Below, piece after piece: positions 39,868 through 59,779 of a stretch of DNA of 64,000 nucleotides. Under the pieces are notes generated by a model. It made no database searches. It was not told the origin of the DNA and worked only from the letters and a program-made list of their open reading frames with translations. The stretch comes from Rebecca billardiae RCC1528. Lineage: Eukaryota; Protista; Haptophyta. The stretch is from assembly GCA_965240325.2 (NCBI GenBank), contig OZ251245.1:496001-560000 (forward strand), given 5' to 3'. Numbering within the stretch: position 1 is the stretch's first letter; each line of letters begins with the position of its first letter. The position numbers were made by a program, and so were the translations under genes.

Positions 39868-42800
39868 ATGGTGGGGGCCGCGCTAGGTCTGCTCGCGCTC
39901 GCGGTGCCACACCCGGGCGTGCTCGTGCGAGTGGCCGGGGCAGGTGCACTCGTGCAGCTTGGCTGCGGCTACGAGCACACCTGCGTGATCTTCTCCGGTG
40001 GCGAGATCAAATGGTGAGCCGCGCGACGCCGGGCGCCCGATGATCACTGCTCCCCGCCTCTCGGCGGACGCGCACCCTGGCACGCTGACCCCGGCGCTGC
40101 GCGCGCTCGCGCCGCCCGTGGTACCCAGCTTTGGCGCTGGAAGCTCAGGTCGCCTCGGCTATGACGACACCGCCAACCGCGGCGATGCGCCCAACGAGCT
40201 TGGCCTCAATCTGCCGGCCATCTCGCTGCCCACGGCGACCACAGCCAGCTCCGTCAGTGGCGGCTACCTGCACACGTGCGCGGTTCTGTCGGACTCGACC
40301 GTGCGATGGTGTGTGCACCGAGCCGCCGCCACGTTCTGCCTCGCGCGCCTCTCACGCGGGCCCCGCGCCTGCGCGTGCACCGTGACGCCGCGCGTCCCGC
40401 CCCGTCCCCCTCCGCTTCTCGCCTGCGTGCTGAGCAGCTGGGGCGACAACACGTACGGCCAGCTCGGGACCGGCGACAACACCGACGCTGGCGATGGCGT
40501 CGGCCGAGCGATGGGCAACACGCTCGTCGCCGCCAACCTCGGCGGCTCAGCCACTCCGCACGAGGTGAAGTGCGGGTACGAGCACACGTGCGTGCGCACG
40601 ACCATCAGCTCAGTCGTGGGCATCCAGTGCTTCGGCCGTGGCGGCAGCGGCCAGCTGGGCAGCGAGTCGACGGCCAATGCGAACGCTGCGGGCTCGCACC
40701 TCGACTTCGGCGCGGGGCTGACCCTCGGCACCACCTGGGACGTGCACTTGGGCGACCACGGCTGCGTGCTCTTCACCGACAGCACGCTCAAATGGTGCGC
40801 ACCCGCCCGCACGGCCGTCGCTCGGGAGGGAGGAGGAGCGTTGCGCCCCGTGGCCCCGTGGCCGATGCAGCGCTGAGTGACGGCTGGCGGCCAACACAGG
40901 CGGGCATGCCCGCGGGCGTGCCGCGGCGACGAGCCGCGGGGGTCGGCCCTGCGCGCCGCGTGCGCGTCTGAGGAGAAGCCCTGCCCCGCACCCGCACGCA
41001 CGCGCCGACCCACCCTGCTGCCGCCGCGCGCAGCTGGGGCCTCAACGGCAATGGGCAGCTGGGCGTGGGCAACACGAACAACTACGGCGCAGGCGCAAGC
41101 ACGATGGGCGACAGCCTGCCCGCCGTGACCACGGGCGGCACGCCGGCCGAGGTGTCCGTGGGCAAGGAGCACTCGTGCGCGCGGCACACAGACGACACGC
41201 TCGTGTGCTGGGGTCAGGATGACCGCGGACGGCTCGGCACGGGCACCAACAGCGACGTGAATGACCCGTCGTCCACCTCGCTGTTCGGCATGGGGACGGG
41301 GCTGAGCGCGGCGTCGCTCCGTCTGGGGGACCAGCACTCGTGCGCCGTGCTGGCGAATAGCGTGCTTAAGTGGTGCGCGCGCAGCGCCTGGCCCGCGCGC
41401 ACGCCCGTCCACGCTGCGCCGAGCCCGCTCATCGCGGGCGCACCGTGTCCGCTCGCCGCGTGTCGCGCTCGCAGTTGGGGCAGGGGCTCAGATGGCCAGA
41501 ACGGCGCTGGCGACGGCAACAACCGCGGCGGCAGCCTGAGCGACATGGGCGACGCGCTGCTGCCTGTGCAGCTGGGCAGCGGGCGCACGGTGAGCGCGCT
41601 GGGCACGGGCGGCGATTTCACCTGCGCGATTCTCGACAACAACGACTTCAAATGGTGTGAGCGTTGATTCAGCGTGGCGCTGCGCGCGCGCGCGCGCACT
41701 GCAGCCAGCCGGGCACGGGCGGGCGAGCGATGAGGCTCACGGCACGCGCCCACCCGCACGCACCGCGCACCGCGCCGCGTGCGCCACGCGCGCGCGCCCG
41801 CAGCTACGGCCTCGGCACCTCGGCGAACGGCCAGCTGGGGTATGGCGACGCTGTGACCCGGGGAACGACGGCGGCCAACATGGGCGACGGCCTGCCTGCC
41901 ATCTCGCTCGAGGCACCGTCGCCGCCGTCGCCGCCGCCTTCTCCGCCGCCTTCTCCGCCGCCGCCTTCGCCGCCGCCGAGCCCGCCACCGAGCCCGCCGC
42001 CGCCCTCTCCGCCGCCGAGCCCGCCGCCGAGCCCGCCGCCGTCGCCGCCACCGAGCCCGCCACCAAGCCCGCCCCCGTTGCCACCACCAAGCCCGCCGCC
42101 GAGCCCGCCGCCACCAAGCCCGCCGCCGTCGCCGCCGCCCTCCCCGCCGCCCTCCCCGCCGCCAAGCCCACCCCCGAGCCCGCCGCCCTCCCCACCGCCA
42201 AGCCCTCCTCCAAGCCCGCCACCCTCGCCGCCGCCCAGCCCGCCGCCGTCGCCACCGCCGTCTCCCCCGCCTCCGAGGCCTCCGCCATCGCCGCCACCAA
42301 TCCCGAGCCCGCCGCCGTCACCGCCACCATCGCCGCCGCCATCGCCGCCGCCATCGCCACCGCCCTCCCCGCCACCAAGCCCGCCGCCGAGCCCGCCGCC
42401 GAGCCCGCCGCCGAGCCCGCCGCCGTCGCCACCGCCGAGCCCGCCGCCGCCCTCGCCGCCGCCATCGCCACCGCCGAGCCCGCCGCCGTCGCCGCCGCCG
42501 AGCCCGCCGCCACGCCCGCCGCCATCTCCGCCGCCAAGCCCGCCGCCGCCATCCCCACCTCCAAGCCCTCCGCCGTCCCCGCCACCATCGCCACCGCCGA
42601 GCCCACCACCGTCGCCGCCACCGAGCCCGCCGCCACCATCCCCCCCACCGAGCCCACCTCCACGCCCCCCGCCGTCGCCGCCGCCGAGCCCGCCTCCAAG
42701 CCCGCCGCCGTCGCCACCCCCGAGCCCGCCGCCGCCGAGCCCGCCGCCCTCGCCACCGCCAAGCCCACCGCCCTCGCCACCACCGAGCCCGCCACCACCT

Positions 42801-45800
42801 TCGCCACCTCCGAGCCCGCCACCCTCGCCGCCGCCCTCGCCGCCGCCGAGCCCGCCGCCCTCGCCACCGCCCTCGCCACCGCCGAGCCCGCCGCCGCCGA
42901 GCCCGCCGCCGTCGCCACCGCCGTCACCACCGCCGTCGCCGCCGCCCTCGCCACCGCCGTCGCCACCGCCCTCACCGCCGCCGAGCCCACCGCCGAGCCC
43001 GCCGCCACCATCGCCGCCGCCAAGCCCTCCGCCCTCACCACCGCCGTCACCACCGCCGAGCCCGCCACCATCGCCACCACCGAGGCCGCCGCCGAGCCCG
43101 CCGCCGAGCCCGCCGCCAAGCCCGCCGCCTTCGCCTCCGCCGAGCCCGCCGCCGAGCCCGCCGCCGCCCTCGCCGCCACCAAGCCCCCCGCCCTCACCAC
43201 CACCGTCACCACCACCGAGCCCGCCACCGTCGCCACCACCAAGCCCGCCGCCGAGCCCGCCGCCAAGCCCACCACCAAGCCCGCCGCCCTCACCGCCGCC
43301 GAGCCCACCACCGAGCCCACCGCCACCATCGCCGCCGCCAAGCCCTCCGCCCTCACCACCGCCGTCACCACCGCCGAGCCCGCCACCGTCGCCACCACCG
43401 AGCCCGCCGCCAAGCCCGCCGCCCTCACCGCCGCCAAGCCCGCCGCCCTCACCGCCGCCAAGCCCACCACCGAGCCCACCCCCGCCAAGCCCACCTCCAA
43501 GCCCGCCGCCATCGCCTCCGCCGTCACCACCACCCTCGCCGCCTCCATCGCCACCGCCGAGCCCGCCACCGTCGCCACCGCCAAGCCCGCCGCCGAGCCC
43601 GCCCCCGTCACCACCGCCGAGCCCGCCGCCGAGCCCACCGCCGCCATTGCCGCCACCAAGCCCTCCGCCGTCACCACCGCCGTCACCACCGCCAAGCCCA
43701 CCACCGTCGCCACCACCGCGCCCGCCGCCGAGCCCGCCGCCCTCACCGCCGCCAAGCCCGCCGCCCTCACCGCCGCCAAGCCCACCACCGAGCCCACCCC
43801 CGCCAAGCCCACCTCCAAGCCCGCCGCCATCGCCTCCGCCGTCGCCACCACCCTCGCCGCCTCCATCGCCACCACCGAGCCCTCCACCGTCGCCACCGCC
43901 AAGCCCGCCACCGAGCCCGCCCCCCTCACCACCGCCGAGCCCGCCGCCGAGCCCGCCGCCGCCATTGCCGCCACCAAGCCCTCCGCCGTCACCACCGCCG
44001 TCACCACCGCCGAGCCCGCCACCGTCGCCACCACCGAGCCCGCCGCCGAGCCCGCCGCCAAGCCCGCCACCAAGCCCGCCGCCGTCGCCTCCGCCTTCAC
44101 CACCGCCGTCACCGCCACCCAGGCCACCTCCGAGCCCGCCGCCCTCGCCGCCGCCCTCGCCGCCGCCCAGCCCGCCGCCCTCGCCACCGCCATCGCCACC
44201 GCCGAGCCCGCCGCCACCGAGCCCGCCGCCGTTGCCGCCGCCGTTGCCGCCGCCCTCGCCGCCGCCCTCGCCGCCACCGTCGCCACCGCCCTCACCGCCG
44301 CCGAGCCCACCGCCGAGCCCGCCGCCGCCCGCGCCACCACCTTCGCCCCCGCCGAGGCCGCCGCCCAGCCCGCCGCCAAGCCCGCCACCGTCGCCGCCGC
44401 CGAGCCCACCGCCGAGCCCGCCGCCGAGCCCACCGCCACCATCGCCGCCACCAAGTCCTCCGCCCTCACCACCGCCCTCGCCACCGCCGAGCCCGCCACC
44501 ATCGCCACCACCGAGCCCGCCACCGAGCCCGCCGCCCTCACCGCCGCCAAGCCCACCGCCCTCGCCGCCGCCGAGCCCGCCGCCGAGCCCGCCCCCGCCG
44601 AGCCCGCCACCAAGCCCGCCGCCATCGCCTCCGCCGTCCCCGCCGCCCTCGCCGCCACCATCGCCACCGCCGAGCCCGCCACCGTCCCCGCCGCCAAGCC
44701 CGCCGCCACCTAGCCCGCCGCCATCACCACCGCCACGCCCGCCACCGAGCCCGCCACCAAGCCCACCCCCTAGCCCGCCCCCAAGCCCACCGCCCTCGCC
44801 TCCGCCGAGCCCGCCGCCCTCGCCGCCACCAAGTCCACCACCGAGCCCACCACCGAGCCCGCCGCCTCCGAGCCCGCCGCCAAGCCCGCCACCGTCGCCA
44901 CCGCCGAGTCCGCCGCCGTCACCACCACCGTCACCACCGCCCTCGCCGCCGCCCTCGCCACCGCCGAGCCCGCCGCCGCCGAGCCCGCCACCGTCACCAC
45001 CGCCTTCGCCGCCGCCTTCGCCACCGCCAAGCCCGCCCCCCTCACCGCCGCCATCGCCGCCGCCATCGCCACCGCCAAGTCCGCCGCCCTCGCCGCCGCC
45101 GAGCCCGCCGCCCTCGCCGCCACCGTCTCCGCCGCCGCCGAGCCCGCCCCCGAGCCCGCCGCCGAGCCCACCGCCGAGCCCGCCGCCGAGCCCGCCGCCG
45201 TCGCCACCGCCGAGCCCGCCGCCGTCGCCACCGCCGAGCCCGCCACCGCCCTCTCCGCCGCCCAGCCCACCGCCCAGCCCGCCTCCGTCGCCGCCGCCGA
45301 GCCCGCCGCCAAGCCCGCCACCGTCGCCACCGCCCAGCCCGCCGCCATCACCGCCACCCTCGCCGCCGCCCTCGCCGCCGCCCTCGCCACCGCCGAGCCC
45401 GCCGCCGCCGAGCCCGCCGCCGAGCCCGCCGCCGAGCCCGCCGCCTTCGCCACCGCCAAGCCCGCCGCCCTCGCCGCCGCCCTCGCCGCCACCCTCGCCC
45501 CCGCCGAGCCCGCCGCCCTCGCCGCCGCCCTCACCGCCACCCTCGCCGCCACCGTCGCCGCCGCCGCCGAGCCCGCCCCCGAGCCCGCCGCCGAGCCCAC
45601 CGCCGAGCCCGCCGCCGAGCCCGCCGCCGTCGCCACCGCCGAGCCCGCCGCCGTCGCCACCGCCGAGCCCGCCACCACCCTCTCCGCCGCCCAGCCCACC
45701 GCCCAGCCCGCCTCCGTCGCCGCCGCCGAGCCCGCCGCCAAGCCCCCCACCGTCGCCACCGCCCAGCCCGCCGCCATCACCGCCACCCTCGCCGCCGCCC

Positions 45801-48800
45801 TCGCCGCCGCCCTCGCCACCGCCGAGCCCGCCGCCGCCGAGCCCGCCGCCGAGCCCGCCGCCGAGCCCGCCGCCTTCGCCACCGCCAAGCCCGCCGCCCT
45901 CGCCGCCGCCCTCGCCGCCACCCTCGCCCCCGCCGAGCCCGCCGCCCTCGCCGCCGCCCTCACCGCCACCGTCGCCGCCACCGTCGCCGCCGCCGCCGAG
46001 CCCACCCCCGAGCCCGCCGCCGAGCCCGCCGCCGAGCCCGCCACCGAGCCCGCCGCCGTCGCCGCCGCCGAGCCCGCCGCCGTCGCCACCGCCGAGCCCG
46101 CCGCCGCCCTCTCCGCCGCCCAGCCCGCCTCCGAGTCCGCCGCCAAGCCCACCGCCGAGCCCGCCGCCAAGCCCGCCGCCATTGCCTCCGCCGAGCCCGC
46201 CGCCGAGCCCGCCGCCACCAAGCCCGCCACCGTCGCCGCCGCCGAGCCCGCCGCCCTCGCCGCCGCCGAGCCCGCCGCCGAGCCCACCGCCCTCGCCACC
46301 ACCGAGCCCGCCGCCCTCGCCACCGCCGTCGCCACCGCCAAGCCCTCCGCCAAGCCCGCCGCCCAGTCCGCCACCTCCGTCGCCACCGCCCTCCCCGCCT
46401 CCGTCGCCGCCGCCGAGCCCTCCGCCTAGTCCGCCGCCGAGCCCGCCGCCGAGCCCACCGCCATCACCGCCACCAAGCCCCCCGCCGAGCCCCCCACCCT
46501 CGGCCCCGCCGAGCCCACCGCCATCGCCGCCGCCACCAAGCCCGCCGCCAAGCCCTCCGCCCAGCCCTCCACCCAGCCCACCGCCCAGCCCGCCTCCATC
46601 CCCGCCCCCGAGCCCACCACCATCGCCGCCACCGAGCCCGCCACCGCCCTCGCCACCCCCGAGCCCACCGCCGTCACCGCCGCCGTCGCCGCCACCGAGC
46701 CCACCACCGTCGCCGCCGCCGTCCCCGCCGCCATCCCCGCCGCCAAGCCCGCCTCCACCGAGCCCGCCGCCGTCGCCTCCGCCCAGCCCACCACCAAGCC
46801 CTCCGCCATCGCCGCCGCCGAGCCCGCCGCCTTCGCCGCCGCCATCACCGCCCCCGAGCCCACCACCATCGCCGCCACCGTCGCCGCCGCCATCACCACC
46901 GCCGAGCCCACCTCCGCCCAGCCCACCGCCCTCCCCTCCGCCCTCTCCGCCGCCAAGTCCGCCGCCATCGCCACCTCCACCATCGCCGCCACCTTCGCCG
47001 CCTCCGTCGCCGCCCCCGAGCCCACCGCCGAGCCCACCACCATCGCCGCCGCCGAGCCCGCCTCCATCACCGCCACCCAGTCCGCCACCGAGCCCACCGC
47101 CAAGTCCGCCGCCGTCACCGCCACCCTCGCCCCCGCCCACGCCCCCACCATCGCCCCCACCATCGCCGCCGCCGAGCCCACCGCCCTCGCCGCCTCCAAG
47201 CCCGCCGCCGAGCCCGCCGCCGAGCCCGCCCCCGAGCCCGCCGCCTTCGCCACCACCGAATCCACCACCATCACCACCGCCGAGTCCACCGCCGTCACCG
47301 CCACCAAGCCCTCCGCCATCGCGGCCACCGAGTCCGCCGCCTTCGCCACCGCCCTCGCCGCCGCCAAGCCCACCGCCAAGCCCACCGCCCTCGCCACCGC
47401 CCTCGCCACCGCCAAGCCCACCGCCAAGCCCACCGCCGTCGCCACCGCCATCGCCACCTCCAAGCCCTCCGCCGTCGCCGCCGCCAAGCCCACCACCATC
47501 GCCGCCACCGTCGTCACCGCCGAGCCCGCCACCGAGCCCGCCGCCGAGCCCACCACCGAGCCCACCGCCGAGCCCACCGCCGAGCCCACCGCCGAGCCCA
47601 CCGCCGTCCCCGCCGCCAAGCCCGCCACCGTCCCCACCACCAAGCCCTCCCCCGAGCCCGCCACCGTCGCCGCCGCCGTCGCCGCCGCCAAGCCCGCCGC
47701 CGTCCCCACCACCAAGCCCGCCGCCCTCGCCACCACCATCGCCTCCGCCGAGCCCTCCTCCGTCGCCGCCACCAAGCCCCCCACCATCGCCACCACCGTC
47801 GCCACCGCCAAGTCCACCGCCATCGCCTCCGCCAAGCCCGCCACCAAGTCCGCCCCCGAGCCCGCCACCGAGCCCGCCACCGAGCCCACCGCCGTCCCCG
47901 CCGCCATCCCCGCCGCCATCGCCGCCGCCTAGCCCTCCGCCCTCGCCGCCGCCGAGCCCGCCGCCCTCGCCGCCGCCGAGCCCGCCGCCGAGCCCGCCGC
48001 CAAGCCCGCCGCCCTCGCCGCCGCCGAGCCCACCACCGTCGCCGCCGCCGTCGCCCCCGCCGAGCCCACCGCCATCGCCCCCGCCGAGCCCGCCGCCGTC
48101 ACCACCGCCGAGCCCACCGCCGTCTCCACCACCGAGCCCGCCACCGAGCCCGCCTCCGAGCCCACCGCCGTCCCCGCCGCCGTCGCCACCGCCCAGCCCA
48201 CCGCCGTCGCCACCGCCGAGCCCGCCACCATCGCCGCCGCCGAGCCCACCGCCGTCGCCACCGCCGAGCCCGCCACCATCGCCGCCGCCGAGCCCACCGC
48301 CGTCGCCCCCGCCGAGCCCGCCGCCCTCGCCGCCGCCGAGCCCGCCCCCGTCCCCGCCACCGAGCCCACCGCCGAGCCCGCCGCCGAGCCCACCGCCGTC
48401 CCCACCGCCGTCGCCGCCGCCAAGCCCGCCGCCCTCGCCGCCGCCGAGCCCGCCGCCGAGCCCACCGCCCTTGCCGCCGCCGAGCCCACCACCGTCACCG
48501 CCACCGTCGCCACCGCCGAGCCCACCGCCGTCGCCCCCTCCGAGCCCGCCACCCTCGCCGCCGCCGAGCCCGCCCCCGTCCCCACCGCCGAGCCCACCGC
48601 CGAGCCCGCCACCGAGCCCACCGCCGTCCCCACCACCGTCGCCGCCGCCAAGCCCGCCGCCGTCGCCGCCCCCGAGCCCGCCGCCGTCGCCACCGCCCAG
48701 CCCACCGCCGTCGCCCCCGCCGAGCCCGCCACCATCACCGCCGCCGAGCCCACCGCCGTCGCCCCCTCCGAGCCCGCCACCCTCGCCGCCGCCGAGCCCG

Positions 48801-51252
48801 CCCCCGTCCCCACCGCCGAGCCCACCGCCGAGCCCGCCACCGAGCCCACCGCCGTCCCCACCACCGTCGCCGCCGCCAAGCCCGCCGCCCTCGCCGCCCC
48901 CGAGCCCGCCGCCGAGCCCACCGCCCTCGCCGCCGCCGAGCCCACCGCCGTCGCCGCCACCGTCGCCACCGCCGAGCCCACCGCCGTCGCCCCCTCCGAG
49001 CCCGCCGCCCTCGCCGCCGCCGAGCCCGCCGCCGAGCCCGCCGCCGTCGCCGCCGCCGAGCCCGCCACCGTCGCCGCCGCCCTCGCCACCGCCGAGCCCT
49101 CCGCCTTCGCCGCCGCCGAGTCCGCCGCCGAGCCCGCCACCGTCGCCACCGCCGAGCCCGCCGCCGAGCCCGCCACCACGCCCACCACCCAGCCCGCCGC
49201 CCTCACCGCCGCCGAGTCCACCGCCCTCGCCGCCTCCAAGCCCACCGCCCTCGCCGCCGCCTTCGCCACCGCCGAGCCCGCCGCCGTCCCCTCCGCCGAG
49301 CCCGCCGCCGAGCCCACCGCCCTCGCCGCCACCGTCTCCGCCGCCAAGCCCACCGCCCTCGCCACCGCCGAGCCCGCCTCCGAGCCCGCCGCCGAGTCCG
49401 CCACCGTCGCCGCCGCCAAGCCCACCACCATCGCCTCCTCCCAGCCCGCCACCCTCGCCGCCGCCGAGCCCGCCGCCCTCGCCGCCGCCGTCACCGCCAC
49501 CCTCGCCGCCACCGTCTCCGCCGCCAAGCCCACCACCGTCGCCGCCACCGAGCCCACCGCCGAGCCCGCCGCCGAGCCCGCCGCCCTCGCCGCCGCCGAG
49601 CCCGCCGCCGAGCCCACCGCCATCGCCGCCGCCGTCGCCGCCACCGAGTCCGCCGCCGAGCCCACCCCCAAGCCCGCCGCCTAGCCCGCCTCCGAGCCCC
49701 CCGCCCTCGCCGCCGCCCTCGCCGCCTCCGTTGCCACCGCCGAGCCTGCCGCCCTCGCCTCCCCCCGCGCCGCCACCAAGCCCGCCGCCCTCGCCTCCGC
49801 CGCACCCGCCGCCCAGTCCGCCGCCGTCCCCACCGCCGGCGTCTCCGCCGAGCCCGCCGCCAAGCCCTCCGCCGTCTCCACCGCCTGCGCTCGTGCCCGC
49901 GCCGCCGCCGGGCCCCGCGCCGTTGCCGCCGCCGGCTCCACCCCCGAGCCCGCCCCCGAGCCCGCCTCGCCAGCCGCCGTCGCGCCCGCCGCCGCGCCCG
50001 CCGCCGCTGCCACCGCCCCCGCCGCGCACCGAGCCGTTCCCTCCGCCACGGCCACCATCCCCGCCGCCATCGCCGCCTCCGAGCCCGCCGCCGAGCCCGC
50101 CGCGGTCGCCGCCGCCGCGTGCTCCGCCGTCGCCGCCTCCCAGCCCGCCGCCGTCGCGGCCACCGCCGCGGCCGCCGCAGCCGCCACCGAGCGCGCCGCC
50201 GCGGCCGCCGCCGCCGCCGCGCACCGAGCCCTTCCCGCCGCCCGCGCCGCCGAGCCCACCGCCATCGCCGCCGCCGCGACCTCCGCCGTCGCCGCCGCCG
50301 CGCACGCCGCCCGCGCCGCCGCCGAGCCCACCGCCGAGCCCGCCGCCCTCGCCGCCGCCGAGCCCTCCGCCCTCGCCGCCGCCGCGCGCGCCGCCCCGCC
50401 CGCCGCCGCGCCCTCCGCCGCCGCCGCGCGCCGAGCCCTTCCCGCCGCCGTCTCCGCCGAGCCTGCCGCCGTCCGCGCCGCCGTCCGCGCCGCCGCCGCC
50501 GCCGCCACCGCTGCTGCGCGCCCTCGTCCTCGGCCTCTCGCCCAGCACCGTCCCGCTCGGCCCGCGCGCGGACGGCGAGGGCGGCGCGGCGCGGCGGCGG
50601 CTGGCGTGCGCGGACGGGTCGGCCACGCCCACCACCACCACGCTCACCGTGGCCGGCCGCGGCTTTGTCGCGGACGCGGGCGCGTCCGAGCGGGTGGCGT
50701 GCACGCTGCACGCGGCGGCGGGGCCGCGGGGCGAGCCGACGACGGCCGCGCAGATACAGAGCGGCGCCTCGGCGCCACTGCTCACGCTCAACGGCACGCT
50801 GCTGCACGAGGAGGCGGCGGCGTGCGCGCTGCCGCGCGAGTGGGCGTGCGGCGCGGCCGCGGCCGGCGCTGCGCTCGGCGCGGGCGAGTACGTGCTCTCG
50901 CTGTGGCTGGGCGCGCCCGCTGCGGGCGGGGCAGTGGTGCCGGCGCTGTTCGGCCCGCCCTCGCTGCGCCTCTTCGACTTCGCCGCCGACGTCTCGCTGG
51001 CCGCCATCGAGCCCGACTCCGGCCCTCTGTCCGGGGGCACTGTCGTCACGCTGAGCGGCGCCGGATTCGAGCTCGCCGCCGCGGCCGGCTCGGCGCTGTG
51101 CTGCGTGCTGCCCGAGCACGGCGGCGAGGCGTGCGCCGCGCGCGCCGAGCTGCTGCGCGCGCTGAACGGCACGAGCCGCGCGCGCTGCGTGCTGCCGCCG
51201 GGTAGCGCGGCCGGCCCGCTTGCGCTCGAGCTCGGCGTGCGGGCGGAGGAGA

Positions 51253-51303
<51 letters not shown>

Positions 51304-54300
51304 GCGGAGGCGGCGCGGCGGGCGTCGTCGTCGGCCGCACGGCGTCGGCGGCCGTCTCGTTCCGCTACTACGACGACGCGGCGTTGCGCGTGCTGTCGGT
51401 CACGCCCGCGCGCGGCATGGCGCGCACCAACACGCTCATCCAGCTGGCGGGCGCGGGCTCGCTCCTCGGCGGCGCGGCCGTGCGCGTCGCGTTTGGGCGC
51501 GCGCGCGCCGAGCGGCCGCTCTCGGCCTCGGCCGCGCACGGCGTGCTGCTGCAGCGGGCGTCGCACTTCGCGCCGGGGGCGAACGGCAGCGCGGACAGCG
51601 CCGCCGGCTCGCGCGCCGTGCAGCTCTTCGTGTCGCTCAACGGGCAGCAGTGGTCGCCGCGCACGCCGGGCGGGCCGGGCGCGGTGCGCTTCTCCTTTGA
51701 ACCCTCCCCGCACGCGCCCGCGCTCGAGGGTGCGCACTTTGACGCGGCGAGCGGCGCGGCGCTGCTGCTGCGCTTCGACGCTCAGCCGACCGACCGCGCG
51801 GGGATGGGCGGCGGCCTCGGGCCGTGCGCGCCGCTGCTCGACGACGAGACGCTCGCGCTGCTGCGCGGCGACGCGCTCGCAGACGGCGCGGACGGCGCGG
51901 GCGCGGTCGCGCCCCCTGCAGAGGACGCGGACACCGAGGCGGCGGCGGCGGCGTGGGCGCGCTGCTACTGGAGCGACGACTCGACGCTCGTCGTGCGGCT
52001 GAGCGCGGACACGCGCGCCGCGCCCGGCATGCGCGTCGGCGTGCGCGCGGGCGCGGTGCGGCCCGCGGCGTGCGCGTGGGCCGCGTGCGCCGCCGCTGCG
52101 CGGGCGGGCAACGAGGCCGCATCCGTCACCGTCGACCCCGACGCGCCGTGCGGCGACGCGCCGTGCCCGACGCCCGTGGCGGTGCTGCGCGCGCCCGCGG
52201 CGATCTCGCCGTGCGCCAACGAGTCGCTGTCCCTCGACGGCACCGCGTCGAGTGCCGGCGGCGTCGTGCCGCCCGCGTACAGCTGGGGGCTGGACGGCAG
52301 CGCGGCGGGCGCGGGCGCTGCGCTCGTCGAGGCTGCGCTGCGCGCGCTGCCGCCGTCCGCGTCGAGCGTGCGCGTGGGCGAGCTGCCCGCCGCCACGTCC
52401 GCGCGAGGGTACGTGATCGCCCTGCGCGTCACCTCCTTCCTCGGCGTGCCCTCCGAGCTCGCGTGGGCCGAGGTGCGGCGCGCGCGCACGCCGGCGCCCA
52501 GCGTGGCGCTGCTCGGCGCGCCCGCCGGCGCCGTGCGCGCCGACCGGCCGCTCGAGCTCTCGGCGCGCGTGCAGCAGCTGCCGCCGTGCTGGCCCGCGGC
52601 GCGCGGTGAGCGCGTGGCGCTGAGCTGGCGCGTGCTCGGCGCGACGCCGCTCGACGCGCCCGCCGCCGCGGCCGCGCCCGCGCCGCTGCCCGACCTGAGC
52701 GCGCACGCGCTCGCGCGCGGCGCACGGCTGTCTCTGCCGGCGCACGCGCTGCGCGCCGGGTTCGCCTACGAGCTCGAGGCGCTGGTCAGCATGGCGGACG
52801 AGCCGGGCGTGCGCTCGAGCGCGCGCGCGACGATCGCGGTGCGCCGCGTGCCGCCCGTCGCCGTGCTCGCCGCCGACGCGCGCACGTTCGGCGCCGACGA
52901 TCCCGTCGTCGCCGACGCGTCCGCAAGCCACGACCCGTCGGGCCGTGAGGGCGGCGCGGCCGAGCGCGCGCAGGCGGCGCTGCTGGCGTTTGAGTGGCTG
53001 CTGCTGCGGCGGGACGAGGGCGCTGGTGGCGGCGGCGGGCTCGGCGCGGGCTCGGCGCTGCCGCTCCCGCCCAACGCCACGGCCTCCCCCGCGGGCGTGC
53101 TCACCATCCCCGCGCGCGCGCTGCCGCCCGGCGCATACACGGTGCGCGTGCGCGTCGCGCGGCCGGGCAGCGCGTCGGCGGCGGCGGAGGCGGCGGAGTC
53201 GAGCGCGACGATGGCGGTGGAGGTGGCGGCGGGCTCGCCGCCCGCCGTGGCGCTGCTGCCGCTGCCGCGCACCGTGTACAACCCCAGCTGGCGCCTCCCC
53301 ACCGAGCGGCTGGCGATCGAGGCGCGCGAGCCGACGGCGGCGGCGGCGGCGGGCGGCGGCGGCGGCGCGTATGCTTTCGAGTGGCGCGCGTGGCTCGTGG
53401 GCGCGGGCGGCGCGCTCGCGCCCGCGCCGCTCAACCTGAGCGATACGGCGTCGGTCACGACGACGGGCGGCGCCTCGCGCGCCCTCGCGTTCCGAAGCGG
53501 CGCGCTCGCGCCCGGCGCCGCGTACGTCTTCGAGCTGCGCGTGGCGGACGTCTCGCGGCCCGAGGCGGGGGCGGGCGGCGCGGCCGTGCGCGTGAGCGTC
53601 AACCGCCCGCCGTTTGGCGGCGCGCTCGACGTGCGCGCGGCAGCGGGCGGCGGCGCGCTCGCGGGCGGCGCGCGCGTGGAGCTCGGCGCCGAGCTGACGC
53701 TGAGCGCGCGCGGCTGGGCCGACGACGACGCGGACGACTTGCCGCTGCGGTACGCGTTTGAGTTCGAGGACGAGGACGCGGACGCGCTCGGCGGCGGCGG
53801 CGGCGGCGGCGGTGCGCGCGCGGCCGTGCCGCTTCTGAGCGGACCGCGCGCGGACAGCCCGTCGCTCACGGGCGTGGTGCTGCCGCCCGGCCGGCTTCGC
53901 GTGCGCGTGCGCGTCTCGGACGCGCGCGGCGCCGAGGCTCGTGCGAGCACAGCGCTCGAGGTCGCGCCTCGCGCGAGCGACGCCGACGACGGCGGCGCGC
54001 TGGCCGCGGCGCTGCTGGTGCGGGCGCGCGCGGCGGTCGAGCGCGCGGACGCGCCGGGCGCGCTGCGGCTGGTCTCGACGGTGGCGGGGCTCGACGCGTC
54101 GGCGGCGCCGCCCGCCGCCGCACTGCTCGCGCTCACGCGCGAGGCCGGCGCGCTCGCCGGCCCCGGCGCGGCGGCGCGCGCGCAGCACGCGGCCGCGCTC
54201 GAGGCGGTCGGCGCGGCGGCGCGCGGCTCGCTGTTGTCGGAGGACGGCGGCGCGCAGGCGTCGGTGCTGGAGCAGGCGGCGGCGCTGGCGCGCGGCGCGC

Positions 54301-54617
54301 ACGAGGGCGGCGAGGGCATCGACGGCCCCAGCGCCGCATCGCTCATCCGGCTCGCCGACCGCGCGCTGCTCGCCAACGCCACCAGCGCCGTCGCCCCCGC
54401 CGACTCGGTCCAGATCGGGCTGGCGGCGCTGCAGCTGGCGGGCTGGCTGGCGCGGGCACTGCTCAGCGGCGCGCTGCCGGGGGAGGCGCCCGTGCGGCTG
54501 GCGGGGGCGGCCGTGGGGCTCGCGGCGGCGCGCGTGCGTGCGGACACGCTGCCGCCGGACGCTGCGCCGCCCGGTGCCGGCGGCGCGCCCGCCGCCGGCA
54601 CGGCGTGGATTGAGCTC

Positions 54618-54649
<32 letters not shown>

Positions 54650-57289
54650 CGCGGGCGTGCGCGTGCCCGCGGGCGCGCTCACGTCGCAGCCGCCGGCTGC
54701 GCTCGGCGACGCGGGCTCGGCGGATGTGGTGGTCACCGCCGTCTCCGTGCGCACGCTCGAGCAGGCGTGGGCGCTGCGCGCCGAAGGCAACGCCACCGCC
54801 GCCGCCGCCGCCGCCGCGGAGATGCTCGCCGAGGCGCAGGGCGCTCCCTTCCTCACCGCCATCATGTCGGTCAACCTGTTCAGCGGCGGCGGCACGGGCG
54901 GCGGCCTGTTGGATGTGCGCGCGCTGAGCGCGCCTGTGCTGCTCGCGCTGCCGCCGCTGCTCGAGCCGCCGCACAGCGCCGAGCCCTCGCTCGCGCGCGC
55001 GTGCCGCTACTGGGACGCCGACGCGCGCGCGTGGTCCGGCCGCGGCTGCACGGCCGTGCCCGCGCCCGCCGGCCGCGACCCCTCGCTGCTGCACTGCGCG
55101 TGCGACCACCTCACCACGTTTGCAGGGCTCGGGCTCCCCGCCAGTGAGGCGGAGGCGCGCGCGGACGCGGGCGCGGTGCGCGTGAACACCTTCAGCGCCG
55201 CCGACGCCATCGAGATCCTCGCCGACCCCGCGGAGGGGCACCGCGAGAACCAGACCATCTACCGGCTGGTCTACTTGCTCGCGGGCGCGAACGGCCTCGC
55301 GCTCGCGTGCGCGCTCGGCGCGGACGCGCGCGCGGCGCGCGCGTACGCGCGGTGGCATGCGGCTGAGCTGAAGACGAGCGGGATGGCGGGCGCGCGGCCG
55401 CACCGGCTGACCGACTCGAGCGTCGGCAGCAGCGCCGCGCCGAGCAGCACCGCCACCGCCTCGCCCACCTCCGTCGCCGCAGAGATCCGAGACGGCCGCT
55501 CGACCGTGCAGCGGCTGCGGATGCGGCGGCGCGCGCGAGAGGAGGAGGAGGGCGCGGCGAGCGCGGCGGCGGAGGGCTCGGCGGTGCTGGCGGCGGACGG
55601 GTCGTCGCCGCTCGCGACGCCGCCCTCGCCGCCGCGCACGCGCTCGGCCCACGACCCGCCCCGCCGCGCCGACGCCGCGCCGCCCGCCGCGCGCCCAGAC
55701 TCGGTGTGGGCCTCGGCGCGCGCGCTCAAGCGCACGGCGCGCGCCGGCTCGACGCGCGGCCGCGCGCTGCTGCTCGCGCATCGGCTGCTCGACGAGCACA
55801 CGCTGCTCGTGCTGCTCTTCGCGCCGGCGGCGCGCGGCGTGCGCAAGGCCGAGCTGGTGCAGACGCTCTTCAACCTCGCCGCCGTGCAGCTGCTCCTCGA
55901 GTGCGCGCTCTTCGACGCGAGCGCACAGCCGGGCGGCGCGGCGCGCGCGCTCACTGTCGCGCTGTACGCGGCCGCGGCCGCGGCGGTGGCGCTGCCCGCG
56001 CTCGCGCTCTGCCGCGGCGTGTGGGCGCTCGCGCACGCCGGCGAGCGCGACTCGCCGCCCGCGCGCCTCTACCGCGCGCTGCGCGCCACGCTCGACGGCA
56101 CGCGCCCCGCCTCGGCCGGCGCGCGCGTGGCGCATGTCTCCGCCCTCGTGCAGTCGTCCGCGCAGCTCTCCTCCATCGTGGGGGCGCGGCAGGTGGTGCT
56201 GGCGGAGGAGGAGGAGGAGGACGGGGGCGAGGAGGAGGAGGGGCAGCGCAGCCTCAGCCCGCAGCGCGCGCTCGGCGTGCCGAGCCGCGCGCGGGACGCG
56301 CCGCCGTCGCCCTTGGCGCTCGACGCCGTCCGCGCGCCGCCGTGCGCGCCGCCGCCGCCGTCCGCCGCCGCCCTCGGCGCCAGCCGCACCCGAGTCACGC
56401 CGGTGCGCTCGCAGCAGCGGCCCGGCGCGCAGAGGCCCGCGTCCGCGCCGCGCTCGGGCACGCGCAGGCCCGGCTCGGCGGGGGTGACGCTCAGCGGCGG
56501 CGGCATCGTCGCGCCGCTGCAGTCGCCCACGGGCGCGCTCGTCCGCCGGCTGGCTGAGGCCGCCGCCGCACGCGCGGGCGGCGACGCGGACGGCGACGCG
56601 GCCGCGGACGCGGAGCGCGCCTCTGACGGCGGCGGCAGTGAGCCGCTCACACGGCCGCGCAGCGCCGGCCGCGCGCGCCGGCCACACAGCGCCAACGTGC
56701 TGCCGCGCTCGGCGCGCGCCACGTTCGCGCCTCGGCGTCGGCCCGAGCTCGGCGGCAGCTGCAGCTCCACGCCGGAGGGCTCGCCGCGGCCGCAGCCACC
56801 GCGCGCGCCGCCCAGCCTTGCGCGCGGCCCCGGCAGCAGCTCCGGCACGAGCCCAGAGCCGGCTCAGCCGCCCTCGCCCAGCGGCTGGCCTCCCGCGTCG
56901 CCGCCGCCCTCGCCGCCGCCGCCACGCAAGCCCAACTCGAGCCGCGTGCGCCTGCCGGGCAGCCCGGCCGAGCCAGCTCCGCGGCGGCACTCGAGCCGGA
57001 TGCCCCCGCCGCCGCCGCCGCCGCCGGCGACGACGCCGACGCCGACCACCACCAACACCACCACCGCGATGTCGACGACAGGAGCCGGGCCGAGCGCGTC
57101 GGCCCAGCCCGAGCCGGCTGCGTGCAGGCCACTGCCACCGCGCTCCCCCCTCCCAGCGAGTGCCGTGCCCGCTCTGACGAGCGTCCCCCTGCAGGCTCGG
57201 CGCCAAAGCTTGCCGCTCGACGCGGGCGCCGAGGCGCGCACCGCTTGGAGCAGCAGCGGCGCAACCGCCACGCCGGCCGCCGCCCCTCA

Positions 57290-57321
<32 letters not shown>

Positions 57322-59246
57322 TCTCCCCCGAGTCCACGGCGGCGGAGGCAGAGGAGGCGGCGGAGGCGGAGGCCGTGAGTGTGGTGGCGGCCGGCGCGAG
57401 CGGGCCGCGCCGGCCGGCCACGGCCCCGGGGCCCACCGCTCCGGAGCGTGCGCGCGCAGAGCGCGCAGAGCGCGCAGACGCGGCCGTGGCGGTCCAGCCG
57501 GTCGCTGCTGCAGCGGCGTGCGAAGCCGAGAGCGAGGCGGCGAGTGCCTGCCGTGCGATGCGCGCGCCGATGGCGGGCGCGGCGGGCGCGGCGGTGGAGG
57601 CGACGGCGGTGGTGCGCACGTCAGCCAGCGCCCATCCGCCGACTCGTGCCGCTCACGCGTCGACCGAGCGCGCCTACGATGCCGTCGAGGTCGATGATGC
57701 CATCGAGGCGCACGAGGCCCGCGCGAGAGCGGCTGGCGTCGGGCTTGCCGGCGCGGGGCCGCTCCTCGAGCCGAGCGCGGCGCCCAGGGCGCCGACGGCG
57801 GCGCACGCGGCCTCCGCGCCGCCGGCCGCTGCAGAGGCACCGGCCGCGCGATCGTGTCCCTCTCTTGCCCTGAGCCTGCCTGCGGAGCCGAGTGACAGCT
57901 TCCGGCGCAGCCCGCGCGAGCCGGGGTACACGCCGCTGAGCGCACGGGACCTGGCCAAGCTGGCGGCGTGCGCGCAGCGCGCCGAGGCTCTGAGCGCGCC
58001 CGCGCCCGCCGCGGCGGCGGCGTCGGCCGAGCCCACGCCTCGCCGCACGCCGCCGCGCGCCATCGCGGCGCCGATCCTCACGAGCGCGCGCATGACGGCC
58101 GACGAGTGGAGGCTCGACATCCCGACGCGCTCGGCGGCCGCGTCGGCGGCGACGACACCAAGCCGGTCGCCGCGCCGCGCCGCCGCCGCCGCCGCCGCGC
58201 CTCCGGCTGCTGCTGCTGCGCCGCCGCCGCCGCCGCCGCTTGCCGCCGAAGCGCCGGCCGCGCACGCAGCCGCGGGCGCTGGGCAGGCCACGCGCCTGCG
58301 CCCGCACGCCGCGGCGCCCGCCGCCGCGCCCGCGGCCGAGGTGTCGGCGCGTGCGCGCCTGGGCTGCAGCGCGCCCACGCCAGCCGTGCCACCGGCGCCA
58401 TCGGCCGCGACCGCGCCGCCACCTCCGCCACCGCCAGCCGGGCCCGGCGCGGCGGCACGGCCGGGCCTGCGCCTCGTCCTGCCGAGCGCGCCGCGCACCG
58501 TGCGCGCCATGGCCAGCCCCGGCTCCTCCGCCGAAGACGGGCCCATCCGCTCGCCGGCCTACGCACTGCCCGCCCCATCCGCCGAGCGACCCGCCGCCCG
58601 GCGCGCGCGCGGCGCGGAGCTCACGGACGCAGAGGCGCAGGCCCTGCAGGCGCTCGTCCGCCTCTTCGACTCGACGAAGCGCCGCCGGCTCGGCGTGAGC
58701 GCGCTGCACATGCTCGCGGCCGAGCTGGGCGACCCGATGACCGCGCCCGAGCTGCGCGCGCTGCTGCGCACGCTCGCCGCGAGCGGCCGCGGCCGCGCCG
58801 GCGCTTCCCTCGACGTGGGCAGCGACGAGCTGTGCGCGTGGTACGCGCGCGCCAAGGCGGCCGAGGCGCGCCGGGCGAGCTCCGGCGGCAGCTGCGCGCA
58901 CGGCCCGTCCGCGCAGCGCGGCCGAGTGCTCCTGGCGTGGGCGGCCATGCTGGGCACGTTCGTCGGGCTCTGTGCGCTGTGCATCGTGTTCGGGAGGGTG
59001 CTCGGCGAGGCGCAGACGGTGGCGATGCTCGAGTCGTGGGGCGTGGCGCTTGTGAGCTCACTCGTCGTGCAGGAGGGGCTGATGGGCACGCTCGCGCAGC
59101 TGCTGCCCGCGCTCAGCCGGCGTGGGGCGAGCAGCGGTCACACTTTCGCCGCATCGCTGAGCATCCGCCTGGCGGCGGCGCCGCGCGCGCTGGCTACCGG
59201 GATCCGCCCCGCGGTGGAGGCGGTGCGCTTCCTCTTCCGCGGCTAG
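39868..59246 (+). CDS. Giant (~6,214 aa) polycystin-1/REJ-like surface protein: SP - 7x RCC1 - (SPPP)n stalk - IPT/TIG x3 - REJ - GPS - 5 TM with EF-hand-like loop; exons 39868-40013, 40129-40308, 40438-40794, 41034-41372, 41475-41654, 41804-59246
   Basis: Leader MVGAALGLLALAV. Seven G..H(T/S)C..C(W/F/Y)G blades after removing five phase-2 introns. IEPDSGPLSGGTVVTLSG (IPT); VNRPPFGG..GWAD..LPLRYAF (REJ); CRYWD..WSGRGC..CACDHL|TTF (GPS); hydrophobic TM segments. Exon lengths sum to 18,645 nt, which is in frame. Confidence 0.85.
41916..50510 (+). repeat. Coding extensin-like Ser-Pro3/Ser-Pro4 repeat, 8.6 kb (~2,865 codons)
   Basis: Uninterrupted frame with synonymous codon variation (ccg/cca/cct/ccc; tcg/agc/tca/tcc). 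Confidence 0.95.
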
Positions 59247-59779
59247 CACGCGTTGTCGAGCCTGCCTTCGTCGTCGACTACGCGCGGACTCACGGCTGGC
59301 TGCACGCGGCTGCGCCGGCTTCGCCCGCGGCGCGTCCTGGCGCCGCTCGCCGCTCATCGGCCTTCAGCTCGGGCTTTCACAGAGTCGACGGTGATTGTAG
59401 GCGAGGCAACGGAATCGAACCTCGCAATCAACAAGTCGAGACTGGTCCAGTGGTCCTTTCGGGCGCACTCTGATTCTGCCGACGTTCTGCCTGCCACGCC
59501 TTTTGACTTGCACAGCGTGCGCGATCTCGACGCGTCAGCGCGTGCTCAGTGAATAAGATCACGCTCGTCGCCGACAGTGTTGCCGAACGCAGAGCCCGGG
59601 AACGAGCTCGGGCGAGTTAGCGGCAAGTTCCACGAACTCGTGGTGCCGCCGTCCTGCCCAAGGCCGCTCGGCAGCGTCTCGCACGAAGGGTGGCGCTCGG
59701 AGTGCAGCCTCGAGTGCACTGCCGTCTTGCAGCACGCGCGCGCGCGCGCACGAGGACAACCCGTATCGACGTTCGCACG

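What the first reader, a model, noticed from the sequence alone, without database searches (positions are those of the whole stretch)
39868..59246. Giant polycystin-1-like receptor with an RCC1 propeller on a ~0.9-micron polyproline stalk
Seen: signal peptide, 7 RCC1-type blades, ~2,865 aa of (SPPP)n, three IPT/TIG-like modules, REJ motifs, a GPS with HL|T and five hydrophobic segments, all in one spliced ORF of ~6,214 aa. Known: REJ-GPS-TM defines the PKD1 family, and SP3/SP4 repeats are Hyp-O-glycosylated polyproline-II rods (~0.31 nm/residue, so ~0.9 micron here). Chlamydomonas mastigonemes are built on a polycystin-like protein with a long Hyp-rich helix. Inference: this could be a membrane-anchored filament (flagellar hair or surface fibre) with a binding propeller at its tip, acting as an adhesion or mechanosensory antenna. 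The RCC1-extensin-REJ-GPS architecture is not one I recognise as described.
Basis: partly seen in the sequence, partly recalled or inferred. Interest (0 to 1): 0.92.

Follow-up and report, generated by a model that had tools for sequence, protein, structure and literature searches.

The report
Giant stalked polycystin-1-like surface receptor
A very GC-rich alga (probably a pavlovophyte haptophyte) has an 18.6-kb gene predicted to put a seven-bladed RCC1 propeller on a ~0.9-micrometre Ser-Pro-Pro-Pro rod, anchored by the sensory half of a polycystin-1 without its channel half; no transcript or protein data were available to confirm it.

Summary
Six exons (39868-59246, + strand) splice into a 6,214-aa ORF:
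- a short signal-like N-terminus
- 7 RCC1 blades
- 2,866 aa of (SPPP)n
- a TIG region
- REJ (Pfam E 6.6e-22)
- a GAIN domain with a canonical GPS (HL|T)
- five membrane helices

The rod is under protein-level selection. It has 641 units, 107 different 12-mers, Ser encoded by both AGC and TCN, and only in-frame length changes.

New here:
- The five-helix base, modelled on a compact relative, matches TM1-TM5 of human polycystin-1 (Z 17.8). PLAT and the channel half are absent.
- Where PLAT would sit, the family has an IQ-like motif.
- An EF-hand pair lies in the next cytoplasmic loop. Both the IQ-like motif and the EF-hands are degenerate in this copy.
- Relatives are pavlovophyte proteins. In Diacronema lutheri a 5,880-aa ORF carries a 1,880-aa SPPP rod that the public annotation leaves out.

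The scan has noted this family before on other DNA of the same genome, with RCC1 and FG-GAP heads and one follow-up.

No sequencing run was listed, so splicing, expression and rod length are untested. An adhesion or mechanosensory function is inference. This is a new variant of a known kind.

The parts
39868..39918 (+). Start codon and short hydrophobic N-terminus (about 17 aa), read as a signal peptide
   Evidence: First ATG after a lower-GC stretch. Hydropathy peak at aa 2-20. Cleavage not tested.
39919..41912 (+). Seven-bladed RCC1-type propeller (aa ~18-437) across exons 1-6. Its five introns lie at 40014-40128, 40309-40437, 40795-41033, 41373-41474 and 41655-41803.
   Evidence: Pfam RCC1/RCC1_2 on the exons. 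Spliced model and GT-AG phase-2 introns. Seven C[WFY]G...H[TS]C units. Weak match to UVR8. Atlas score 0.98.
41913..50510 (+). (SPPP)n rod: 2,866 aa, 641 units, no Tyr, Cys or Lys. If it forms a polyproline-II helix it would be ~0.89 micrometre long.
   Evidence: TRF finds period 12 with only 68% DNA match. There are 107 distinct 12-mers. Ser codons are AGY 345 and TCN 312. 95% of 101-mers are unique.
50019..50450 (+). Three copies of the motif PPR(T/A)EPFPPP at the membrane-proximal end of the rod (50019-50048, 50214-50243, 50421-50450)
   Evidence: The same motif ends the rod in the relative L002, and a similar one does so in D. lutheri.
50511..51710 (+). TIG/IPT region. One Pfam-supported TIG at 51003-51239, flanked by two TIG-like stretches that Pfam does not recognise.
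   Evidence: Relatives have 2-4 TIGs here.
51714..53987 (+). REJ module (Pfam REJ at 52710-53987; family homology starts at about 51714)
   Evidence: Pfam E 6.6e-22. Alignments to Diacronema and Logan relatives. 334 representative hits.
53991..55124 (+). GAIN domain: helical subdomain, beta subdomain and GPS motif (54999-55124). The predicted cleavage is HL|T, before the Thr codon at 55113.
   Evidence: GPS E 3.6e-6. Invariant GPS residues. The family profile hits adhesion-GPCR GAIN/GPS (ADGRF1 2.5e-8; the ADGRD1 match covers 243 profile positions). For the AF2 model, the top 8 Foldseek hits are all GAIN domains, and VIA gives BAI3 GAIN Z 12.4 over 231 residues.
55257..55322 (+). TM1
   Evidence: Conserved in relatives.
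55506..55538 (+). Degenerate IQ-like motif (VQRLRMRRRAR) in cytoplasmic loop 1, where polycystin-1 has PLAT
   Evidence: Family consensus AAxxIQRHxRGRxARK in alignment A3. Coordinates. Calmodulin or EF-hand binding is inferred.
55854..56033 (+). TM2-TM3 hairpin (55854-55913 and 55950-56033)
56049..58661 (+). Low-complexity Ala/Pro/Arg/Ser-rich cytoplasmic linker of about 870 aa
   Evidence: The frame stays open here (P of no stop by chance about 0.007 over 56600-58700), but GC3 drops from 0.95 to 0.83-0.90. Relatives have linkers of 150-540 aa, including an MMETSP transcript. An unrecognised intron is not excluded.
58662..58832 (+). EF-hand-pair homologue with degenerate Ca2+ loops
   Evidence: Pfam EF-hand_7 only at E 0.096 in this copy. 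Relatives have canonical loops, and the family profile matches calmodulin at E 1e-27.
58926..59105 (+). TM4-TM5 hairpin (58926-58994 and 59034-59105)
59106..59246 (+). Short cytoplasmic tail and stop codon. No further membrane helices and no channel domain.

Best explanation
One gene encodes a giant multi-pass surface glycoprotein.

Outside the cell, from tip to membrane:
- a seven-bladed RCC1 propeller, the presumed ligand-binding tip
- a 2,866-aa (SPPP)n tract, predicted to form a stiff polyproline-II rod of about 0.9 micrometre, probably hydroxylated and O-glycosylated
- a TIG region, a REJ module and a GAIN domain with an intact HL|T self-cleavage site

In the membrane is the five-helix N-terminal transmembrane domain of the polycystin-1 family, without PLAT and without the six-helix channel half. 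The two cytoplasmic loops carry an IQ-like motif and an EF-hand pair. Both are degenerate in this copy.

Proposed mechanism (inferred): binding or drag on the tip pulls on the rod. The load reaches the GAIN domain and shifts or removes the N-terminal fragment. This exposes the tethered stalk peptide that begins at the Thr, as in polycystin-1 and adhesion GPCRs. That peptide acts on the five-helix base, which signals through its cytoplasmic loops or through a separately encoded polycystin-2-like partner.

Shown: the architecture, the reading frame, selection on the rod, GAIN/GPS conservation, and the resemblance of the base to PKD1 TM1-TM5.

Inferred: secretion, hydroxylation and glycosylation, cleavage, cellular location, and signalling.
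For: - Spliced model with one stop and five same-position GT-AG introns.
- The last RCC1 blade, the rod and the TIG-REJ-GPS-TM part lie in one exon and one frame. That frame has 0 stops in 5,813 codons, against about the expected numbers in the other two frames. GC3 is 0.93-0.99 up to window position 56600.
- Rod selection: Pro codon positions 1-2 are about 99% conserved while position 3 is only 62% G. Ser is encoded by two unlinked codon families.
- Pfam REJ, GPS, TIG and RCC1.
- GAIN supported by profile and by fold.
- Base: best match is 8z6b_A polycystin-1 residues 3063-3610, Z 17.8, rmsd 2.6 A, 185 residues. Every other row in the list is an EF-hand-type match to the loop-2 part, at Z 12.5 or lower. 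PKD1L2 and PKD1L3 are the top non-EF matches in AFDB Swiss-Prot.
- Relatives have the same order of blocks, including an mRNA-derived MMETSP protein.
- Giant SPPP rods fused in frame to the same base occur in Diacronema lutheri (5,880-aa ORF) and in a Logan contig.
- Tethered-agonist signalling of polycystin-1: PMC9171645, PMC11458180.
- Long glycosylated PPII helices spanning hundreds of nm, joined to a polycystin-like anchor: PMC11015965.
Against: - No transcript, read or protein evidence; no run was listed.
- The base model is of a relative only 27% identical to the window protein over the whole post-GPS region (P0012), not of the window protein. Its mean pLDDT is 68.
- The GAIN model is of middling confidence (pLDDT 65; Foldseek E only 3e-3).
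- In this copy the EF-hand loops and the IQ-like motif are degenerate, which weakens a Ca2+-signalling role.
- GC3 falls in 56600-58700, so part of the cytoplasmic linker could be an unrecognised intron.
- Whether haptophytes hydroxylate and glycosylate SPPP was not tested.
- The D. lutheri relative has a rod with no head. The rod itself may therefore be the functional element rather than a lever for a tip.
Confidence: 0.7

Rival explanations
1. Mainly structural. The protein is a membrane-anchored surface fibre (a flagellar hair, or a unit of the cell coat) whose glycosylated rod is the functional part. The REJ-GAIN-5TM base is only the anchor, and GPS cleavage is a shedding point rather than a sensor.
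For: The Diacronema lutheri relative starts with a signal-like peptide followed directly by a 1,880-aa SPPP rod, with no head. The EF-hand and IQ motifs are degenerate in the window copy. Chlamydomonas mastigonemes are anchored through a polycystin-like protein with long PPII helices (PMC11015965). Free glycofibrils built on (S/T)Pxx tetrapeptide repeats exist in pond water (PMC11725842). From my own knowledge, untested here: pavlovophytes bear fine non-tubular hairs on the long flagellum.
Against: The head is a complete, conserved seven-bladed propeller, and by the scan's untested notes the family carries different heads (RCC1, FG-GAP). That fits ligand recognition. Relatives keep canonical EF-hands and IQ motifs, which suggests the ancestral base signals.
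Confidence: 0.2
2. Gene-model or assembly artefact. The RCC1 head plus rod and the REJ-GPS-TM part are separate genes, or the rod is intronic, or its length is an assembly error. On this view the long ORF only reflects the scarcity of stop codons in 82% GC DNA.
For: High GC does produce spurious long ORFs here: antisense ORFs of 3,178 and 2,571 aa overlap the gene. No read or transcript data could be obtained. Public annotators treated such rods as non-coding in D. lutheri.
Against: The sense frame has 0 stops where 10-13 are expected per segment, and the other two sense frames do carry stops. The antisense ORFs are explained by the rarity of TTA, CTA and TCA codons at GC3 of about 0.95. Codon-level selection in the rod would not occur in an intron. 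There is no Met or signal peptide at the rod-TIG junction. 95% of 101-mers in the rod are unique, so collapse or expansion is unlikely. The same in-frame fusion of rod and base is found in two other organisms.
Confidence: 0.06
3. Cell-cell recognition molecule of the sexual-agglutinin type. On this view the head-on-shaft glycoproteins mediate gamete or self/non-self adhesion, and the multigene family with varied heads gives specificity.
For: Chlamydomonas agglutinins are cane-shaped hydroxyproline-rich glycoproteins with a head and a long shaft on the flagellar membrane (PMC2113723). By the scan's untested notes, many paralogues with different heads exist in this genome.
Against: No sequence relationship to the agglutinins was tested or seen. 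The agglutinins were described as extrinsic fibrils, not as GAIN/5-TM proteins. Sexual cycles of pavlovophytes are poorly known (my own knowledge).
Confidence: 0.1

Closest known systems
Polycystin-1 family (PKD1, PKD1L1-3, PKDREJ; sea-urchin REJ proteins)
   Same: REJ module, GAIN domain with an HL|T GPS, then a five-helix N-terminal transmembrane domain that superposes on PKD1 TM1-TM5. The extracellular N-terminus is large and modular.
   Different: No PLAT in loop 1; an IQ-like motif sits there instead. No TM6-TM11 channel-like half. An EF-hand pair lies in loop 2. There is an RCC1 head and a 2,866-aa SPPP rod in place of LRR, C-type lectin and PKD repeats.
Chlamydomonas MST3 (mastigoneme axial protein) and the related proline-rich partial-PKD2 proteins (PMC11015965)
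   Same: An extracellular filament built on long Ser/Hyp-rich PPII helices, tethered to the membrane by a polycystin-type domain. That paper also raises the idea of a split polycystin fold.
   Different: MST3 has a PKD2-like channel-type domain completed by SIP. Here the anchor is the PKD1-type REJ-GAIN-5TM half, with no channel domain. No MST1-like sheath partner is known. The rod here is a single chain of about 0.9 micrometre.
Adhesion GPCRs
   Same: A GAIN/GPS autoproteolysis module next to the membrane. The sequence after the cleavage site resembles a tethered agonist.
   Different: No secretin-type 7TM. The membrane domain matches PKD1 TM1-TM5.
Extensins and algal hydroxyproline-rich glycoproteins, including Chlamydomonas sexual agglutinins (PMC2113723)
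   Same: Ser-Pro3-4 repeats, and a head-on-shaft design on the cell or flagellar surface.
   Different: No Tyr cross-linking motifs: there are 0 Tyr in the rod. The protein is an integral membrane protein with a GAIN site. The shaft is about four times longer than my recollection (not read here) of ~225 nm for the agglutinin; the paper PMC2113723 surfaced.
TLP-4 glycofibril (PMC11725842)
   Same: A single linear chain of (S/T)Pxx tetrapeptide repeats with a 12.4 A rise per unit. That paper lists 600-6,000-aa repeat proteins in protists as candidates.
   Different: The TLP-4 sequence and its source organism are unknown. Its glycans sit on one dihydroxyproline and one Ser/Thr per unit. SPPP has three prolines, and nothing links this gene to that fibril.

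Membership tests
Polycystin-1 (PKD1) family | REJ module | tested here: met
   Pfam PF02010 E 6.6e-22, 78 bits against a cut-off of 25
Polycystin-1 (PKD1) family | GAIN domain with GPS (HL|T) just before TM1 | tested here: met
   GPS E 3.6e-6. Invariant C, W, C, HLT and F across 20 relatives. GAIN fold hits. Cleavage itself was not tested.
Polycystin-1 (PKD1) family | N-terminal five-helix transmembrane domain (TM1-TM5) | tested here: met
   The model of relative P0012 matches 8z6b_A residues 3063-3610 at Z 17.8. PKD1L2 and PKD1L3 are the top non-EF hits. The window protein aligns block by block to that relative. The window protein itself was not modelled.
Polycystin-1 (PKD1) family | PLAT/LH2 domain in the first cytoplasmic loop | tested here: not met
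   No PLAT hit at E up to 10 on 54999-56132 or in the whole protein. The loop is low-complexity with an IQ-like motif.
Polycystin-1 (PKD1) family | C-terminal six-helix polycystin channel-like domain (11 TM in total) | tested here: not met
   No PKD_channel hit. The protein ends 46 aa after the TM5 segment as I delimited it. Distant relatives lack the domain too.
Adhesion GPCR | Secretin-like 7TM after the GAIN domain | tested here: not met
   Five helices only. There is no 7TM hit by Pfam, nor among the listed fold-search rows.
RCC1-like seven-bladed propeller | Seven RCC1 repeats closing a propeller | tested here: met
   Pfam RCC1/RCC1_2 on the exons. Seven units, with the N-terminal strand completing the last blade. 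Atlas score 0.98. No 3D model was made, because the spliced sequence has no reference.
Extensin-type hydroxyproline-rich glycoprotein | Ser-Pro3-5 repeats | tested here: met
   641 SPPP(P) units
Extensin-type hydroxyproline-rich glycoprotein | Tyr-containing cross-linking motifs | tested here: not met
   0 Tyr in 2,866 aa
Extensin-type hydroxyproline-rich glycoprotein | Prolyl hydroxylation and Hyp-arabinosylation / Ser-galactosylation | not testable with these tools
   Needs biochemistry, or at least a genome-wide search for P4H, HPAT and SGT homologues.
Mastigoneme MST3-like anchor | PKD2-like transmembrane domain | tested here: not met
   No PKD_channel hit. The base matches the PKD1 TM1-TM5 region instead.
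EF-hand Ca2+ sensor | Canonical DxDxDG-type loops | tested here: not met
   Both loops of the window copy lack the ligand residues, and Pfam gives only E 0.096. Relatives do meet this feature.

The most novel reading that the evidence does not exclude
Pavlovophyte algae carry a hidden multigene class of micrometre-long, GAIN-cleavable 'antenna' receptors. Interchangeable heads (RCC1 here; FG-GAP or none elsewhere) sit on single-chain Ser-Pro3 glycorods. The rods are anchored by a free-standing REJ-GAIN-5TM module, that is, the sensory half of polycystin-1 as a separate protein with its own IQ/EF-hand switch. This would mean polycystin-1 arose by fusion of such a module with a polycystin-2-like channel. 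These proteins would form the fine surface or flagellar hairs of these cells and act as mechanical or contact sensors.
Probability: 0.3. Interest if true: 0.85.

Novelty: new variant of a known kind. Interest (0 to 1): 0.7.

Why it matters
If expressed as predicted, this would be one of the longest single-chain stalks known on a membrane receptor.

It would also be a natural case in which the REJ-GAIN-5TM sensory half of polycystin-1 exists without the channel half. That bears on how polycystin-1 evolved, and on whether its N-terminal membrane domain can signal on its own.

There is a practical lesson too. Gene predictors drop such rods. The Diacronema lutheri protein KFE25_012990 is annotated at 3,751 aa, but the ORF is 5,880 aa. 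Public proteomes therefore hide this architecture.

Finally, it gives candidate genes for the glycofibrils now being seen by cryo-EM in environmental water.

Tried and rejected
- Read evidence. Two searches for sequencing runs (4 kb of REJ/GAIN, 2 kb of the head) listed none. Read laying could therefore not be used, and splicing and rod length stay untested.
- Giant relatives. A search restricted to 3.2-10 kaa proteins with the REJ-GPS part found nothing. This is now explained by the truncated public annotations.
- RCC1 heads in relatives. None of the 150 best representative hits has RCC1-like motifs. Their annotated Pro-rich linkers are 174 aa or shorter.
- Foldseek against the PDB with the base model returned only EF-hand lobes. 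The polycystin-1 match appeared only with the Foldseek-independent aligner and in AFDB Swiss-Prot.
- PLAT, PKD_channel and 7TM were looked for by Pfam at permissive thresholds and not found.
- The two extra TIG modules are not recognised by Pfam.
- The PDB sequence search of the TIG-REJ part gave only noise.
- Literature searches for this layout, for REJ/RCC1 in haptophytes and for pavlovophyte flagellar hairs found nothing usable.
- The antisense ORFs of 3,178 and 2,571 aa were considered as genes and rejected. They mirror the sense codon frame of a gene with GC3 of about 0.95.
- The spliced RCC1 head was not folded or searched whole, because it has no reference and long sequences may not be typed.

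Full report
**Setting.** The window is 60-86% GC. Long ORFs in such DNA need care: 46 ORFs of 150 aa or more overlap the region, including antisense ORFs of 3,178 and 2,571 aa. The finding rests on a + strand ORF of 5,860 codons (41664-59246) plus upstream exons.

**Gene model.**
- Reading 39600-42000 shows five short introns (102-239 nt).
- All five are GT-AG, and each splits a Cys codon (TG|C or TG|T) at the same K/R-C-[WFY]-G position of an RCC1 blade.
- Joining 39868-40013, 40129-40308, 40438-40794, 41034-41372, 41475-41654 and 41804-59246 gives 18,645 nt, 6,214 aa and a single terminal stop.
- The last RCC1 blade, the whole rod and the TIG-REJ-GPS-TM part lie in one exon and one frame.
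- That frame has no stop in 5,813 codons. The other two + frames carry about the expected numbers, for example 14 and 10 where 13 are expected in 50511-55400.
- GC3 is 0.93-0.99 from 50300 to 56600.
- The antisense ORFs mirror the sense codon frame and are by-products of the very high GC3.
- Introns (80% GC) are richer in GC than the head exons (67-70%).

**Head.**
- Pfam finds RCC1/RCC1_2 in the exons (E 1e-9 to 1.5e-12).
- The spliced head divides into seven units of 55-64 aa. Each carries C[WFY]G...G(Q/R)LG...H(T/S)C, and the N-terminal strands complete the last blade.
- One exon weakly matches UVR8 among solved structures.
- The Atlas places it among RCC1_2 proteins, many of them bacterial surface proteins joined to Ig-like or fn3 domains (score 0.98).
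- The N-terminus is a short hydrophobic stretch. I read it as a signal peptide, untested.

**Rod.**
- 41913-50510 encodes 2,866 aa: 602 SPPP and 39 SPPPP units, 97.4% Ser or Pro, with no Tyr, Cys or Lys.
- At the DNA level it is not a simple microsatellite. TRF finds period 12 with only 68% matches, and 107 different 12-mers encode SPPP.
- Ser uses AGC/AGT 345 times and TCN 312 times.
- Pro codons keep CC in about 99% of cases, while the third base is G in only 62%.
- All length differences are in frame.
- 95% of 101-mers are unique, and the longest exact internal repeat lies between 200 and 300 nt.
- This pattern shows long-standing selection on the peptide. It argues against both an intron and a collapsed or inflated assembly.
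- As a polyproline-II helix (0.31 nm per residue, established knowledge; 12.4 A per tetrapeptide in PMC11725842) it would measure about 0.89 micrometre.
- Three copies of PPR(T/A)EPFPPP mark its proximal end.

**Ectodomain base.**
- After the rod come one Pfam-supported TIG (E 2.5e-4) and two TIG-like stretches that Pfam does not see.
- Then REJ (E 6.6e-22) and GPS (E 3.6e-6).
- In an alignment of 20 family members, the GPS residues C, W, W, G-C, C, H-L-T and F are invariant or nearly so.
- The family profile hits the GPS/GAIN of solved adhesion GPCRs: ADGRF1 at 2.5e-8, and an ADGRD1 match covering 243 profile positions.
- An AF2 model (pLDDT 65) has a confident six-helix subdomain followed by a less confident beta part.
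- The eight best Foldseek PDB hits are all GAIN domains (E 3e-3).
- In the second-look aligner, BAI3, GPR110 and latrophilin GAIN domains (Z 10.0-12.4, 223-231 residues) are, together with one low-quality designed-protein row, the only listed matches that span both subdomains.
- I accept a GAIN domain. Cleavage is untested.

**Membrane base.**
- Hydropathy and conservation give five helices: TM1, a TM2-TM3 hairpin and a TM4-TM5 hairpin.
The window's base exceeds the size limit because of its 870-aa linker, so I modelled the compact relative P0012:980-1609 with a family alignment (pLDDT 68, with TM helices up to 95).
- Foldseek against the PDB saw only the EF-hand lobe.
- The Foldseek-independent search put polycystin-1 of the PC1/PC2 complex first: 8z6b_A residues 3063-3610, Z 17.8, rmsd 2.6 A, 185 residues. 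Every other row in the list is an EF-hand-type match to the loop-2 part, at Z 12.5 or lower.
- Foldseek against AFDB Swiss-Prot independently ranked human PKD1L2 first and mouse PKD1L3 third, the two best non-EF-hand hits.
- By my recollection of the human protein, residues 3063-3610 enclose TM1-TM5.
- So the base is the N-terminal membrane domain of the polycystin-1 family.
- PLAT and PKD_channel are absent in this protein and in distant relatives. The protein ends 46 aa after the TM5 segment as I delimited it.

**Cytoplasmic loops.**
- In loop 1, where PKD1 has PLAT, the family has a conserved IQ-like motif, AAxxIQRHxRGRxARK.
- In loop 2, after a variable linker, it has an EF-hand pair that matches calmodulin at E 1e-27 and folds like a calmodulin lobe.
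- An intramolecular EF-hand/IQ switch is my inference.
- In the window copy both are degenerate.
- The 870-aa linker stays open (chance about 0.007) but has lower GC3. A hidden intron there is not excluded.
- An mRNA-derived MMETSP relative has a 450-aa linker in the same place.

**Relatives.**
- The exhaustive search found 334 proteins.
- The closest (30-38% identity) are from Diacronema lutheri and Pavlovales sp. CCMP2436, plus unnamed assemblies. Distant ones include Phytophthora capsici.
- They share TIG(n)-REJ-GPS-TM-EF-hand.
- None has an RCC1 head, and their annotated Pro-rich linkers are short. That turned out to be an annotation artefact.
- Upstream of D. lutheri KFE25_012990 (3,751 aa) the same frame stays open for a total of 5,880 aa from a Met with a signal-like start. 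It includes about 1,880 aa of SPPP units (387) and a second Pro-rich linker that the annotation removed as an intron. That assembly is from PacBio reads (PMC8379373).
- The ORF upstream of the Logan protein P0003 is likewise Pro-rich up to the end of the contig, and ends with PPPPPRTEPFPPP.
- So the fusion of rod and base is conserved in at least three organisms. The D. lutheri rod has no head.
- Another D. lutheri member (KFE25_002410) has neither rod nor head.
- Scan notes report eight further loci in this genome with RCC1 or FG-GAP heads on similar rods. One was followed up. I could not read those sequences.

**Interpretation.** The architecture fits a surface receptor whose tip is held nearly a micrometre from the membrane, and whose GAIN domain can convert pull into exposure of a tethered peptide. 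This is documented for polycystin-1 and adhesion GPCRs (PMC9171645, PMC11458180). The nearest functional analogues are Chlamydomonas MST3 (PMC11015965) and the head-and-shaft sexual agglutinins (PMC2113723). A purely structural fibre is the main rival, favoured by the headless D. lutheri relative and the degenerate Ca2+ motifs here. Location, glycosylation, cleavage and signalling are all untested.

**Verdict.** This is a new variant of a known kind: a polycystin-1/REJ-family base with an HRGP rod. It belongs to a family the scan has already met in this genome. Two points are added here: the polycystin-1 TM1-TM5 identity of the base, and the hidden rods in the public Diacronema genome.

Noticed in passing
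L003:4174-21814 (Diacronema lutheri JAGTXO010000041.1): A single 5,880-aa ORF: signal-like start, about 1,880 aa of SPPP units, a small domain, a second Pro-rich linker, then TIG-REJ-GPS-EF-hand. The public protein KFE25_012990 (3,751 aa) starts only at ORF residue ~1986 and splices out the second linker, so the giant rod is missing from the public proteome.
   Followed up: yes
L002:1-1729 (Logan SRR30664515 contig): The frame of protein P0003 stays open upstream to the contig start, as 575 aa or more of SPPPP-type repeats ending in PPPPPRTEPFPPP. The called protein is therefore N-terminally truncated.
   Followed up: partly
window 55506-55538; alignment A3: A conserved IQ-like motif (AAxxIQRHxRGRxARK) lies in the first cytoplasmic loop of the family, at the place of PLAT in polycystin-1. 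Together with the EF-hand pair in the next loop it suggests a built-in calmodulin-like switch. The window copy is degenerate.
   Followed up: partly
window 41804-51340 (-) and 49491-57206 (-): Antisense ORFs of 3,178 and 2,571 aa overlap the gene. They lie in the mirror frame of the sense codons and are explained by GC3 of about 0.95, so they are not genes.
   Followed up: yes
window 40014-41803: The introns of the head are more GC-rich (78-81%) than the exons they separate (67-70%). This is the reverse of the usual pattern.
   Followed up: no
window 5683-9369 (+): A 1,228-aa ORF very rich in Ala, Arg and Glu (AEAAR-type repeats), probably a coiled-coil protein, in an 85% GC stretch with strong AT skew.
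   Followed up: no
window 59690-61528 (+): The ORF directly downstream begins with a CKGCRLSKIKCD...C..C pattern that looks like a Zn2Cys6 DNA-binding domain. Not tested with profiles.
   Followed up: no
window 51200-51290: A run of about 20 Gly (with two Asp) interrupts the TIG region between the Pfam-supported TIG and the next TIG-like stretch. Similar Gly runs recur in the REJ and GAIN parts.
   Followed up: no
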